DNA of 63,266 bases, filler included, from Octopus bimaculoides (Eukaryota): assembly GCF_001194135.2 (NCBI RefSeq). It is 5 parts of 4 records of this genome, joined end to end, with 100 filler letters (N's around TTAATTAATTAA, not from the genome) between each part and the next. Parts side by side here need not be neighbours in the genome. Positions count along the whole stretch, not along the records: positions 13,709 to 28,180 come from NC_068984.1; 4 more parts are not named here. One strand, 5' to 3'. Made by a program: the position numbers and the translations under genes. Below, one piece after another: positions 15,285 through 17,398 of this stretch. Each line of letters opens with the position of its first letter. The first letter of the stretch is position 1. Below the pieces are notes generated by a model, which worked only from the letters and a program-made list of their open reading frames with translations, was not told the origin of the DNA and did not search any database.

Positions 15285-17398
15285 TCAGCCTTCATCGTGT
15301 TTATGTTTCTTTCTATTATCTCTATGAACTCTGTAGTTCATATGAAGAGGTGCAGTATTTCCAATTATATCGAGATCACTGCGCATGTCACCAGATTTGT
15401 GTTCATGGGTTGGCGAAAGATGTTGGCGGGCTTCTTCGGCCGTAATTACACCCACCTCTTCTTCAGAGACTTTCTCCGTCTTCCGACTTCTTCCCTCTCT
15501 ATTATTATTATTATTATTATTGTTCTTATCTACATTAAAATATTTCTCCTTCATATCATGAATTGTTTTGTAAATGGAATATAAATAACCACTAATTCGA
15601 CTTTCTTCCACAGGCTTCACCTTTTCTTCCAGGTCTTTGTCTTTACCATCTTTCACTTCAATTTTTCTCTTCGCAAATGATGGTCCACCAGGTACCTTGT
15701 TGTTGCTTAAACTCTCATCTAGAGCATCGATGTCTGGAGCCAAAACACTCCCAGGTTGTGAAAGAGAGTCAGCCTTTTTCTTTTTCTCGTGTTCCTGATG
15801 TTTATAACCAGAACTCGCATCATTATGCATTAAAAGACCATGCATTAATTCTTCGGCATCTGGAGGACTCGCTGGTTTATCTGTTTTACGAATTTTCTGG
15901 AACTTTTTCTCATCTTCATGGACATGACTTTCTCCTGGTTTGGCGTCATTATGCATAAGAACTCCATGAAGATATTCCTCATAGTCCATTGGTTTATTTA
16001 CCGTTCCTTCTTTTTTCTTCTTGTCATCGGTATTTTCATCTTCTCCTGAATGGCCATGGTGGTCTTTTCCAGGTTTCGAGTCGCCATGCATCATTACACC
16101 ATGTAAATACTCTTCATAATTCTGAACACTAAGTCGACCTCTAAATTTGGGGTTTATAGATTTCTCGGCATTGTCCTTGGTGTGATGAAGAAGGCCAGCC
16201 TGTGAGTCGCCATGCATCAAAACTCCATGCATTTGTTGTTCTATGTCTTGAGGCCCAGCTTTTGTGTCTGTGGCCACAACATTCTCTGATCCAGTATGTT
16301 CATGGCTGTGGTCCTTACCAGGGGCACTGTCACCATGCATCAGAACTCCATGCATTTGTTGTTCTATGTCTTGAGGGCCAGCTTTTGTGTTTGTGTGTGC
16401 AACATTCTCTGATCCAGTATGTTCATGGCTGTGGTCCTTACCAGGGGCACTGTCGCCATGCATCATAACTCCATGCATTTGTTTTGCTATATCTTGAGGC
16501 CCAGCTTTTGTGTCTGTGGCCACAACATTCCNNNNNNNNNNNNNNNNNNNNNNNNNNNNNNNNNNNNNNNNNNNNNNNNNNNNNNNNNNNNNNNNNNNNN
16601 NNNNNNNNNNNNNNNNNNNNNNNNNNNNNNNNNNNNNNNNNNNNNNNNNNNNNNNNNNNNNNNNNNNNNNNNNNNNNNNNNNNNNNNNNNNNNNNNNNNN
16701 NNNNNNNNNNNNNNNNNNNNNNNNNNNNNNNNNNNNNNNNNNNNNNNNNNNNNNNNNNNNNNNNNNNNNNNNNNNNNNNNNNNNNNNNNNNNNNNNNNNN
16801 NNNNNNNNNNNNNNNNNNNNNNNNNNNNNNNNNNNNNNNNNNNNNNNNNNNNNNNNNNNNNNNNNNNNNNNNNNNNNNNNNNNNNNNNNNNNNNNNNNNN
16901 NNNNNNNNNNNNNNNNNNNNNNNNNNNNNNNNNNGTCTTGAGGCCCAGCTTTTGTGTCTGTGGCCACAACATTCTCTGATCCAGTATGTTCATGGCTGTG
17001 GTCCTTACCAGGGGCACTGTCGCCATGCATCATAACTCCATGCATTTGTTTTGCTATATCTTGAGGCCCAGCTTTTGTGTCTGTGGCCACAACATTCCCT
17101 GATCCGCTATGTTCATGGCTGTGGTCCTTCCCCGGTGTCTTATCCCCATGCATCATCACACCGTGCATGCTGTCGGCAACAGTTTTTGGTCCGTTTATTT
17201 CATTTCCAGCCACGTCATTACCACCACCACCATCACCGCCATCACTGCTAGAGGCATCTGGTGGAACATCAGATTTCACATCCGAGACATTTTGATCAAT
17301 CGCCATTTGCTTAACAAGTTCCTGTTGATTCTGCTTCTGTGAGTCCCCATCGACCTCGATCTGGTTGTCTTGGTATTTCAGGGCAGTGGAATTGGAAT
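15285..17398 (-). CDS. Terminal coding exon of an unrecognised His/Met-rich tandem-repeat protein (upstream exon(s) not identified)
   Basis: Polypyrimidine tract and TTTACAG acceptor at 17400-17399 (phase 1). Reading frames are open on both sides of a 403-N gap, ending in TGA at 15285. 41-aa repeats with mostly frame-preserving variation; 8 visible [ML]HG[VL][ML]MH[GN]D motifs; C-terminus ..RKKHKHDEG*. Confidence 0.85.
16200..17180 (-). repeat. 123-bp coding tandem repeat (41 aa unit)
   Basis: Equivalent CTAT positions at 16241, 16364 and 16487 give a period of 123. The gap at 16532-16934 interrupts the array. Confidence 0.95.

What the first reader, a model, noticed from the sequence alone, without database searches (positions are those of the whole stretch)
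15285..17398. Unrecognised His/Met-rich repeat protein: candidate secreted copper/zinc-binding system
Seen: a ~700-codon exon (including the gap) with 8 visible copies of [ML]-H-G-[VL]-[ML]-M-H-[GN]-D, most followed by PG and a His cluster (KDHSHEH, KDHHGH, SHVHE, KHQEH). Linkers are G/S/D/E/K-rich and predicted disordered; the visible sequence has no Cys; poly-basic sites (KKKK, KRK, RK) occur C-terminally. The phase-1 acceptor is typical of an exon following a signal-peptide exon. Known: Met/His clusters bind Cu(I)/Cu(II)/Ag(I) (Ctr1 N-terminus; HxxM motifs of SilE/PcoE), His-rich proteins harden squid beak and polychaete jaws, and cephalopods need copper for haemocyanin. The motif is not the GHG-type repeat of squid beak HBPs, and I recognise no family. 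Inference: a lineage-specific metal storage/chaperone, sclerotisation or granin-like protein. The conserved motif amid divergent linkers implies selection on the motif.
Basis: partly seen in the sequence, partly recalled or inferred. Interest (0 to 1): 0.85.

Follow-up and report, generated by a model that had tools for sequence, protein, structure and literature searches.

The report
Conserved His/Met-repeat secretory protein gene
The window holds the large last exon of a real octopod gene for a mostly disordered protein with repeated histidine/methionine motifs; it belongs to an unnamed, unstudied family found across molluscs, annelids, ribbon worms and a flatworm, and probably binds metal ions.

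Summary
On the minus strand, 17398..15285 is one open exon with 568 readable codons and 8 copies of [ML]HG[VL][ML]MH[GN]D. It has 8.1% His, 4.0% Met and no Cys, and starts at a phase-1 acceptor. The gap lies inside a nearly identical 123-bp (41-aa) tandem array. Both sides read the same repeat in the same frame, and the gapless Argonauta orthologue is one continuous ORF, so continuity is likely but not proven.

The gene is not cephalopod-specific. It belongs to a small family (81 clusters among 1.84 billion proteins) in bivalves, gastropods, a chiton, annelids, nemerteans and a flatworm. Every member is labelled "uncharacterized"; there is no Pfam, PDB-sequence or literature match.

Full-length relatives have a signal peptide on a separate first exon, 5-9 motif units and conserved C-terminal blocks. 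Octopus versus Argonauta gives dN/dS of about 0.15, with motif cores 86% identical and linkers 51%. AlphaFold predicts only short helices over each motif. These would place Glu/His/Met/Asp on one face.

The best reading is a disordered, multi-site metal (Cu/Zn) binder of the secretory pathway, analogous to SilE/PcoE. Metal binding, metal identity, location and expression are untested. The haemocyanin link is weakened.

The parts
15285..17398 (-). Large terminal coding exon (includes the TGA stop at 15285-15287 and the assembly gap). It encodes everything after the signal-peptide exon.
   Evidence: ORF and frames. Homology to 46-68 family proteins at E down to 1e-138. 69% nt alignment to the Argonauta exon only, with flanks unalignable. 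dN/dS 0.145 over 314 codons.
17399..17440 (-). Splice acceptor (AG = 17400/17399) with its polypyrimidine tract; intron phase 1.
   Evidence: Sequence ttttcttttacag|ATTCC. Argonauta has ttgcag|GC at the homologous codon with an in-frame stop just upstream. The Mercenaria exon1/exon2 junction is also phase 1. The in-frame ATG at 17486 (MEKKKYLFWFYFF...) is most likely this tract read as protein.
17193..17398 (-). N-terminal non-repeat region (DSNSTALKYQDNQ...GGGGNDVAGNEIN) with an N-glycosylation sequon NST at 17393-17385.
   Evidence: Argonauta has an NTT sequon at the same place, followed by a polyQ tract.
16206..17192 (-). Array of 41-aa/123-bp units (5 visible motif copies plus the gap). 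Unit = (N)VVATDTKAGPQDI[AE][KQ]QMHGV[ML]MHGDSAPGKDHSHEHTGSE.
   Evidence: TRF period 123, 87-90% matches. Units octA2/B1/B2 are 91-98% nt identical to each other and 63-72% to any Argonauta unit.
16532..16934 (.). Assembly gap (403 N) inside the array.
   Evidence: Same frame and same repeat register on both sides; contig ends 38/39 nt identical; length not a multiple of the unit.
15819..16106 (-). Three diverged units (LHGVMMHGD, LHGVLMHND, MHGLLMHND), each a one-to-one orthologue of an Argonauta unit.
   Evidence: 65%, 72%, 59% nt to arg11, arg12, arg13.
15537..15599 (-). Conserved C-terminal block 1, RISGYLYSIYKTIHDMKEKYF (family consensus ISDSILxDIELMKKRYL); predicted helix.
   Evidence: Alignments; AF2 helix 292-309 at pLDDT about 80; coordinates.
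15321..15446 (-). Conserved C-terminal blocks 2 and 3: ITAEEARQHL ... GDMRSDLDIIGNTAPLHMNYRVHR (family consensus FTAEDA...EDMRHDLELIGSTxPINARHK).
15285..15302 (-). C-terminal tail KHDEG plus stop.
   Evidence: Identical tail in Argonauta. HDE-x tails recur in a limpet (Patella), nemerteans and annelids.
15003..15284 (-). Probable 3' UTR: (CA)n microsatellite directly after the stop (15200-15280), then candidate poly(A) signals ATTAAA (15128, 15023) and AATAAA (15003).
   Evidence: The signals are consensus matches only and are not verified.

Best explanation
SHOWN. 17398..15285(-) is the large last exon of a protein-coding gene under purifying selection in an octopod. It is the orthologue of an Argonauta gene mislabelled 'filaggrin-2-like'. 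It belongs to a small, unnamed family spread across Spiralia.

The family plan is:
- a signal peptide on its own first exon;
- a phase-1 intron;
- one exon with 5-13 units of G-P-x-D-[AG]-[EM]-[DE]-x-[LMF]-H-G-[VIL]-[LM]-M-H-G-D-x3-G-x2-H(-x-H);
- three conserved C-terminal blocks.

In the octopus lineage the 41-aa unit was recently amplified or homogenised. This is why the assembly broke there.

INFERRED. The protein enters the secretory pathway. Exon 1 is not in the window, so this rests on relatives. The protein is largely disordered. Each unit forms, or can be induced to form, a short capped helix of about 11 residues. That helix lines up Glu(-3), His(1), Met(5) and Asp(8) on one face and Asp(-5) and His(6) on another, followed by a flexible HxHxH cluster. 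Each unit would therefore be a His/Met/carboxylate metal site. The whole protein would be a multi-site, moderate-affinity binder (buffer, store or carrier) of Cu and/or Zn in the lumen of the secretory pathway or outside the cell. It would work like the bacterial periplasmic 'metal sponge' SilE/PcoE without being related to it. Which metal, and whether the protein is retained or secreted, is open.
For: Real gene:
- ORF open in one frame only.
- Only the exon aligns to Argonauta.
- dN/dS 0.145.
- HMM E-values 1e-76 to 1e-160 with relatives.

Family and architecture: alignments; signal-peptide-like hydrophobic N-terminus and no other hydrophobic segment in 30 full-length members; Mercenaria two-exon, phase-1 structure; spliced transcript-like contigs in relatives (for example P0006, 1433 nt for 438 aa including the signal-peptide exon).

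The motif is what is conserved: His1, His6 and His15, Met5, Gly2/7/12, Pro-7 and Asp8 carry the information. Met sits at position 5 in 274 of 317 units with an anchor that does not require it. Core identity is 86% versus 51% for linkers.

Structure: two AF2 runs give pTM 0.23-0.24, with the only confident elements being helices over each motif and the C-terminal blocks.

Analogy: SilE is disordered, folds into helices on binding 6-8 Ag+, and uses conserved His/Met motifs (PMC5008109). The His/Met-rich lumenal loop of ATP7A binds Cu in the secretory lumen (PMC8067471).
Against: - No metal-binding experiment exists for any member, and no homology to any metal-binding family.
- Caenogastropod and some annelid members replace most Met by Val or Glu (VHGxxHVHD, LHGGEHVDH). 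Met is therefore not universally required, which argues against an obligatory Cu(I) site and favours His-based chemistry (Zn, Ni, Cu(II), or pH sensing).
- The conserved hydrophobic face (I/A-4, M/L0, V3, L4) could equally mean the helices are protein-protein or membrane-contact elements.
- Exon 1 and any transcript of the octopus gene were not found.
- AF2 confidence is low overall.
Confidence: 0.5

Rival explanations
1. ER/Golgi-resident luminal protein rather than a secreted one. The conserved C-terminal tail (HDEG here; HDES/T/A, KEEI, KHEI, xTDL, SDDL, KKDL in relatives) would be a variant retrieval signal. The protein would buffer or hand over Cu/Zn (or Ca) inside the early secretory pathway.
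For: 30 of 62 family C-termini are HDE-x or end in [DE][LIMF], and the HDE-x form recurs across three phyla (Mollusca, Annelida, Nemertea). From memory, MANF uses RTDL and calumenin HDEF as KDEL-receptor-type signals. The His/Met lumenal loop of ATP7A shows that such chemistry is used in that compartment.
Against: HDEG lacks the terminal Leu/Phe that the KDEL receptor needs, so it fails PROSITE [KRHQSA]-[DENQ]-E-L. 32 of 62 members, including most bivalves, end in plain basic tails. There are no localisation data.
Confidence: 0.2
2. Granin-like or prohormone cargo of dense-core vesicles. The acidic, disordered, His-rich protein would aggregate with Zn/Ca at low pH and be cut at basic sites into peptides.
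For: Signal peptide in relatives; disorder; KKKK, KRK and RK clusters; His clusters titrate at granule pH.
Against: Basic clusters are not conserved: KKKKEG in octopus versus KEIKKD in Argonauta, and absent in bivalves. No Gly-Lys-Arg amidation sites flank the conserved blocks. Conservation sits on His, Met, Gly and Pro, not on peptides between cleavage sites.
Confidence: 0.1
3. The helices are interaction or pH-switch modules, not metal sites. Protonation of His would drive assembly or condensation, or binding to a partner or to haem.
For: Each helix has a conserved hydrophobic stripe. His is the only ligand type kept in all lineages. His/Met are also haem axial ligands (general knowledge).
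Against: The near-invariant Met5 and Asp8, together with the trailing HxH clusters, are more typical of metal sites. No partner is known.
Confidence: 0.12
4. Structural or sclerotisation protein of beak, radula, sucker rings or egg case, or a high-capacity Ca2+ buffer.
For: D+E is 17% of residues.
Against: The family is present in bivalves, nemerteans and a flatworm that lack such structures. There are no Gly/Ala/Tyr-rich modules, and Gly is only 9.7%. Size and C-terminal blocks are conserved like those of a soluble protein. The conserved residues are His/Met rather than acidic runs.
Confidence: 0.04
5. Single-exon gene starting at the ATG at 17486, whose hydrophobic start (MEKKKYLFWFYFFPSFVPCILISSLFSF) is itself the signal peptide, so there is no upstream exon.
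For: The ORF runs from this ATG in frame into the exon. The peptide has a basic n-region followed by a hydrophobic core.
Against: The stretch is a T/C-rich polypyrimidine tract ending in ttttacag. Argonauta has the AG at the homologous codon, an in-frame stop right upstream and no ATG. Mercenaria has a separate signal-peptide exon with the same phase.
Confidence: 0.04

Closest known systems
Unnamed spiralian protein family, e.g. Argonauta hians 'filaggrin-2-like' (P0002), Mercenaria LOC123553981, Crassostrea gigas LOC105319517/19/21 and LOC105341149 (UniProt K1RKW0), Liolophura 'sodium/potassium/calcium exchanger 1-like', Littorina 'elastin-binding protein EbpS'-like, Owenia, Paralvinella, Lineus, Tubulanus and Macrostomum hypothetical proteins
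   Same: True homologues: same motif unit, same order of C-terminal blocks, same HDE-x tail in several, and the same signal-peptide exon plus phase-1 intron plus one large exon.
   Different: The octopod genes have lost the Cys-pair first unit (GPCxGMDCLHG), gained a Q/G-rich N-terminal stretch, and amplified a 41-aa unit (8 to about 12 copies here, 13 in Argonauta, versus 5-9 elsewhere). The database names are automatic mislabels prompted by low-complexity composition.
SilE / PcoE (enterobacterial periplasmic Ag/Cu 'molecular sponge')
   Same: Exported, intrinsically disordered, about 10 His and 10-15 Met in repeated His/Met motifs, predicted short helices, several metal ions per chain (PMC5008109). 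This is what the octopus protein most plausibly works like.
   Different: No sequence homology (no Pfam hit at E<=1). SilE motifs are MxxHxxxxxHxxM and HxxMxxxHxxM; here the motif is [ML]HG[VL][ML]MHGD with Gly/Pro caps plus an HxHxH cluster. This protein is eukaryotic, 4-5 times longer, and has extra conserved C-terminal blocks.
His/Met-rich lumenal loop of the copper pumps ATP7A/ATP7B; Met/His clusters of the Ctr1 ectodomain
   Same: His+Met clusters exposed to the secretory lumen or outside the cell that bind Cu and may hand it to cuproenzymes (PMC8067471; Ctr1 from general knowledge).
   Different: Those are short loops of membrane transporters. This is a soluble protein with no hydrophobic segment after the signal peptide, and it is not homologous.
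Pseudomonas CopA/CopB 'MDH' octapeptide repeats (recalled from memory, not tested)
   Same: Tandem Met/His/Asp/Gly-rich short repeats in exported copper-binding proteins.
   Different: They sit within or next to a multicopper oxidase or outer-membrane protein. The organisms are unrelated and no homology was tested here.
Cephalopod His-rich material proteins (squid beak HBPs, suckerins) and reflectins
   Same: Cephalopod, His- (and for reflectins Met-) rich, repetitive.
   Different: Different repeats and composition (from memory: GHG/Gly-Ala-Tyr modules; reflectin MD-x5-MD motifs, cytoplasmic, nearly no Lys/Leu/Ala). None of those families was retrieved by the profile searches. Those families are cephalopod-restricted, whereas this one is spiralian-wide.

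Membership tests
Unnamed spiralian MHG-repeat family | Significant full-length sequence similarity to members | tested here: met
   E 3e-138 to Argonauta and 1e-42 to 1e-11 to bivalve, chiton, nemertean and annelid proteins; window protein scores 1e-101 and 1e-76 against family profiles.
Unnamed spiralian MHG-repeat family | Repeated unit G-P-x-D...[LMF]-H-G-[VIL]-[LM]-M-H-G-D-x3-G-x2-H | tested here: met
   8 visible units; family consensus from 282 units.
Unnamed spiralian MHG-repeat family | C-terminal blocks in order (ISDSILxDIELMKKRYL; FTAEDA; DMRHDLELIGNTxPINxRHK) | tested here: met
   RISGYLYSIYKTIHDMKEKYF, ITAEEARQHL and GDMRSDLDIIGNTAPLHMNYRVHR align to them. The 'LGLDxDLLK...EYxxW' block before them is only weakly recognisable in the octopods.
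Unnamed spiralian MHG-repeat family | N-terminal signal peptide on a separate exon, phase-1 intron | tested here: inconclusive
   A phase-1 acceptor is present and conserved, but exon 1 was not found within 10.8 kb upstream in the window or 8.6 kb in Argonauta.
Unnamed spiralian MHG-repeat family | First unit with Cys pair (GPCxGMDCLHG) | tested here: not met
   No Cys in the 568 visible codons, nor in the Argonauta exon. This appears to be a lineage loss, unless the pair is encoded upstream.
SilE/PcoE | Sequence homology to the family | tested here: not met
   No Pfam family at E<=1 for the octopus protein, and none shared by 41 relatives.
SilE/PcoE | Conserved HxxM / MxxH motifs on helices, disordered apo form | tested here: inconclusive
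   H1-x2-M4 occurs only in the 4 units with Met at position 4; H1-x3-M5 occurs in all units. Disorder plus short helices are predicted only. Metal-induced folding is not testable here.
KDEL-type soluble ER residents | C-terminal [KRHQSA]-[DENQ]-E-L (PROSITE ER_TARGET, from memory) | tested here: not met
   The tail is H-D-E-G: three positions fit and the essential terminal Leu does not.
Granins / prohormones | Conserved dibasic processing sites flanking conserved peptides | tested here: not met
   Basic clusters differ between octopus and Argonauta and are absent in bivalves.
Ctr1-type copper transporters | Membrane protein with Met motifs in the ectodomain plus three TM helices | tested here: not met
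   No hydrophobic segment beyond the signal peptide in any member (maximum 10-residue hydropathy below 2.0 in almost all).
Squid beak HBPs / suckerins / reflectins | Their characteristic repeat modules and composition | not tested
   Only compared from memory. None of them appeared among the hits of three homology searches.

The most novel reading that the evidence does not exclude
The family is a soluble luminal metal carrier of the spiralian secretory pathway, partly retained by its unusual HDE-x / x-[DE]-[LI] tail. It would take Cu (or Zn) released by ATP7- or ZnT-type pumps and deliver or buffer it for secreted metalloenzymes such as tyrosinases, haemocyanin, amidating enzyme and laccases. 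To my knowledge (not checked in the literature here), no dedicated luminal protein of this kind has been described in any eukaryote.
Probability: 0.1. Interest if true: 0.85.

Novelty: new variant of a known kind. Interest (0 to 1): 0.55.

Why it matters
If the units bind metal, this is an ancient animal counterpart, invented independently, of bacterial periplasmic metal sponges. It is conserved across at least four spiralian phyla, yet it has no name, no Pfam entry and no paper. Molluscs handle very large fluxes of Cu and Zn (tyrosinases for shell and ink, haemocyanin, oyster Zn/Cu granules). The luminal or extracellular proteins that buffer these metals are poorly known. The motif is short and sharply defined, so a synthetic 41-mer gives a direct test. 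A homologue in Macrostomum, and several in oysters, would allow knock-down and localisation. On the practical side, the finding shows that the public gene models for the octopod genes are truncated: they start at an internal Met after the repeat array.

Tried and rejected
- Pfam on the octopus protein and on 41 relatives: nothing consistent.
- PDB sequence search with the family profile: only chance hits at E about 0.7.
- Full-text searches for motif strings, LOC/UniProt identifiers, 'filaggrin-2-like' plus octopus, and general keyword sets: no paper on the family.
- Search for exon 1 by blastn, tblastn with relatives' N-termini, and tblastx against the Argonauta upstream region: only microsatellites and a shared interspersed repeat. 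One 41-bp hit (23149-23189) turned out to be a (TCTG)n repeat.
- Homologue search with the part of the protein before the gap: nothing, so no public gene model covers it.
- Exact look-up of the window's own gene model: not on record.
- Two AlphaFold runs gave pTM 0.23-0.24. No fold search was run, because matches to such models would be meaningless.
- Rejected: the haemocyanin-specific role (by phyletic distribution); the reflectin, beak-protein and suckerin identities; the ATG at 17486 as the true start.
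Full report
**1. What is in the sequence**

The coding strand is minus. A single frame is open from 17486 to the TGA at 15285-15287, and the other frames are full of stops. Upstream of 17398 the sequence is a T/C-rich tract ending in ttttacag. 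The exon therefore begins at 17398 with two bases of a split codon, which is intron phase 1.

Excluding the N run, 568 codons are readable. His is 8.1%, Met 4.0%, Cys 0, Asp+Glu 17% and Lys 9.9%. The pattern [ML]HG[VL][ML]MH[GN]D occurs 8 times (17168, 17045, 16478, 16355, 16232, 16106, 15971, 15845). It occurs nowhere else in the piece in six frames, and it never appeared in 20000 shuffles of the protein. Six copies are followed by x-P-G, and all are followed by a His cluster.

**2. The gap**

The 403 N (16532-16934) lie inside a tandem array with a 123-bp (41-codon) period. The peptide NVVATDTKAGPQD is read on both sides in the same frame. The two contig ends are identical at 38 of 39 positions in register. 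The units next to the gap are 98% identical at the DNA level, which explains why the assembler stopped there.

The same landmark is 444 nt apart across the gap. That distance is divisible by 3 but not by 123, so the stated length is only an estimate. If the ends simply overlap, there are 8 copies. If the estimate is roughly right, 3-4 more are hidden. The frame is preserved in either case.

The orthologous exon of Argonauta hians comes from an assembly without gaps at this locus. It is one uninterrupted ORF of about 860 codons with 13 copies. Continuity in the octopus is therefore likely, but it is not proven.

**3. It is a real, constrained gene**

Only the exon aligns between the window and the Argonauta locus (69% nt); introns and flanks do not align. 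Over the 314 codons that align one-to-one outside the homogenised array, dN/dS is 0.145. dS is about 1.9 and therefore saturated, so the ratio is approximate.

Identity to Argonauta is 86% in the motif cores, 80% in three C-terminal blocks and 51% elsewhere. The first unit and the last four units are one-to-one orthologues. The central units are far more alike within the octopus (91-98%) than to any Argonauta unit (63-72%), which indicates recent amplification or concerted evolution. However, it rests on the cross-species comparison, not on the near-identical copies within the array.

**4. It belongs to a wider, undescribed family**

The first homologue search returned 46 proteins. An exhaustive profile search of 1.84 billion cluster representatives returned only 81 clusters, and a profile search with names returned 68.

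Named sources are:
- a cephalopod (Argonauta);
- many bivalves (Sinanodonta, Potamilus, Mercenaria, Mactra, Mya, Ruditapes, Solemya, Ostrea, Saccostrea, Crassostrea/Magallana with several loci, Mytilus, Pinctada, Pecten, Tegillarca, Dreissena);
- a chiton (Liolophura);
- gastropods (Patella, Littorina, Batillaria, Babylonia);
- annelids (Owenia, Paralvinella, Dimorphilus);
- nemerteans (Lineus, Tubulanus);
- the flatworm Macrostomum;
- a weak hit in Priapulus (E 5e-4).

All are 'uncharacterized' or carry composition-driven mislabels such as filaggrin-2-like, Na/K/Ca exchanger-like or EbpS-like. There is no Pfam match for the octopus protein or for 41 relatives. There is no PDB sequence match. 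No paper contains the motif or the identifiers.

**5. Family anatomy**

Full-length members start with a typical hydrophobic signal sequence, often ending ...G|KPT, and have no other hydrophobic segment.

In Mercenaria the signal peptide (aa 1-34) is a separate exon. It is joined by a phase-1 intron to one exon holding everything else. This is the same plan as implied by the octopus and Argonauta acceptors. Contigs such as P0006 (1433 nt encoding 438 aa with the signal-peptide exon joined) look like spliced transcripts, so relatives are expressed.

The unit consensus from 282 units is G-P-x-D-[AG]-[EM]-[DE]-x-[LMF]-H-G-[VIL]-L-M-H-G-D-x3-G-x2-H. With an anchor that does not demand it, Met occupies position 5 in 274 of 317 units.

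In most lineages the first unit carries a Cys pair (GPCxGMDCLHG), and in several annelid-type proteins every unit does. The octopod exons lack it. Caenogastropods and some annelids keep the His residues but replace most Met (VHGxxHVHD, LHGGEHVDH).

Three C-terminal blocks follow, and the octopus has all three.

The extreme C-terminus is unusual. HDE-x (HDEG in both octopods) recurs in a limpet, nemerteans and annelids. Many others end in KEEI, KHEI, xTDL, SDDL or KKDL. Together these account for 30 of 62 tails. They resemble ER-retrieval signals, but HDEG fails the canonical pattern at the last residue.

**6. Structure**

AlphaFold2 was run with family alignments on the window protein and on the Mercenaria protein. 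It gave mean pLDDT 57-58 and pTM 0.23-0.24. The only confident elements are an 11-residue helix over each motif (for example IEQQMHGVLMH, pLDDT 71-78) and helices over the C-terminal blocks; linkers are below 50.

The conserved G-P before each helix and H-G-D after it look like helix caps. On an ideal helix, Glu(-3), His(1), Met(5) and Asp(8) fall within 40 degrees of one another. Asp(-5) and His(6) form a second face. Ile/Ala(-4), Met/Leu(0), Val(3) and Leu(4) form a hydrophobic stripe.

**7. Most likely mechanism**

The protein is a signal-peptide-bearing, largely disordered chain. It carries 8 to about 12 capped helices, each presenting His, Met and carboxylate ligands and each followed by an HxHxH cluster. 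This is what one expects of a multi-site, moderate-affinity metal binder.

The closest functional precedent is SilE/PcoE. That protein is disordered, has conserved His/Met motifs, and folds into helices on taking up 6-8 Ag+ (PMC5008109). The His/Met lumenal loop of ATP7A shows that the same chemistry is used for Cu in the secretory lumen (PMC8067471).

Met conservation in molluscs points to Cu(I). The His-only variants and the HxHxH clusters point to Zn or Cu(II). I cannot choose between these.

What is shown: the gene, the family, the architecture, the constraint and the predicted helices. What is inferred: secretory entry for the octopus protein, metal binding, and the sponge or carrier role.

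**8.

- 'Lineage-specific' is wrong.
- The haemocyanin rationale is weakened, because the family with Met intact is present in oysters, mussels, annelids and nemerteans, which to my knowledge lack haemocyanin.
- Sclerotisation is unlikely, given the distribution and composition.
- Granin or prohormone is unlikely, because the basic clusters are not conserved.
- A secreted or luminal metal-binding protein remains the best reading.

**9. Novelty and score**

The sequences are in databases, but the family is unnamed and unstudied. Its proposed mode of action is of a known kind (a His/Met metal sponge) in a new, unrelated animal form.

Interest is moderate (0.55). It is a clean, testable, phylum-spanning orphan family, but every functional statement is still inference.

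Noticed in passing
window 15200-15280: A (TG)40 microsatellite on the + strand, i.e. (CA)n in gene orientation, starts 5 bases after the stop codon. It would lie in the 3' UTR.
   Followed up: partly
window 26868-27242 (-): An ORF matches the HTH_48 domain of Mos1/mariner transposases (E 2e-18). It is a mariner-type transposon remnant upstream of the gene.
   Followed up: yes
window 13778-14280 (-), 18818-19705 (-), 23398-23823 (+): ORF fragments look, from memory, like C-terminal parts of LINE-type retrotransposon ORF2 (e.g. LYGAESWTL......CDRRCLSFAGFKSHL). Pfam gave no significant hit, so this is unverified. The second fragment is interrupted by the gap at 18939-19380.
   Followed up: partly
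window 19786-19860 (-) and L001 6460-6534: A short stretch is shared between the octopus and Argonauta introns (64% at the protein level over 25 codons, with a stop inside). It is probably a common interspersed repeat rather than an exon.
   Followed up: no
window 20400-21090, 22380-23030, 27766-28044: Long imperfect (CA/TG)n and (CACG/TCTG)-type simple repeats give spurious Thr/His/Cys/Val-rich ORFs on both strands. Further assembly gaps lie at 18939-19380, 22529-22718 and 25967-26172.
   Followed up: no
window 15285-15302 and family C-termini: The tail HDE-x (x = G, S, T, A, E, Q, N) is kept in cephalopods, a limpet, nemerteans and annelids. Other members end in KEEI, KHEI, xTDL or SDDL. These are KDEL-like but non-canonical, and remain unexplained.
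   Followed up: partly
window 16452-16478 onward (public model P0001); L001 10001 (P0002): The public gene models for both octopods start at an internal Met inside the repeat array (392 and 397 aa). They miss the N-terminal half of the exon and exon 1.
   Followed up: yes
L001 8650-9000 (Argonauta): The Argonauta orthologue has a polyglutamine-rich stretch of over 100 residues at the start of the exon, where the octopus has a short Q/D/S-rich segment.
   Followed up: no
Crassostrea/Magallana gigas loci LOC105319517, LOC105319519, LOC105319521, LOC105341149: Oysters carry several paralogues. Three have adjacent locus numbers, which suggests a tandem cluster. A 1328-aa UniProt entry (K1RKW0) may be a fused model.
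   Followed up: no
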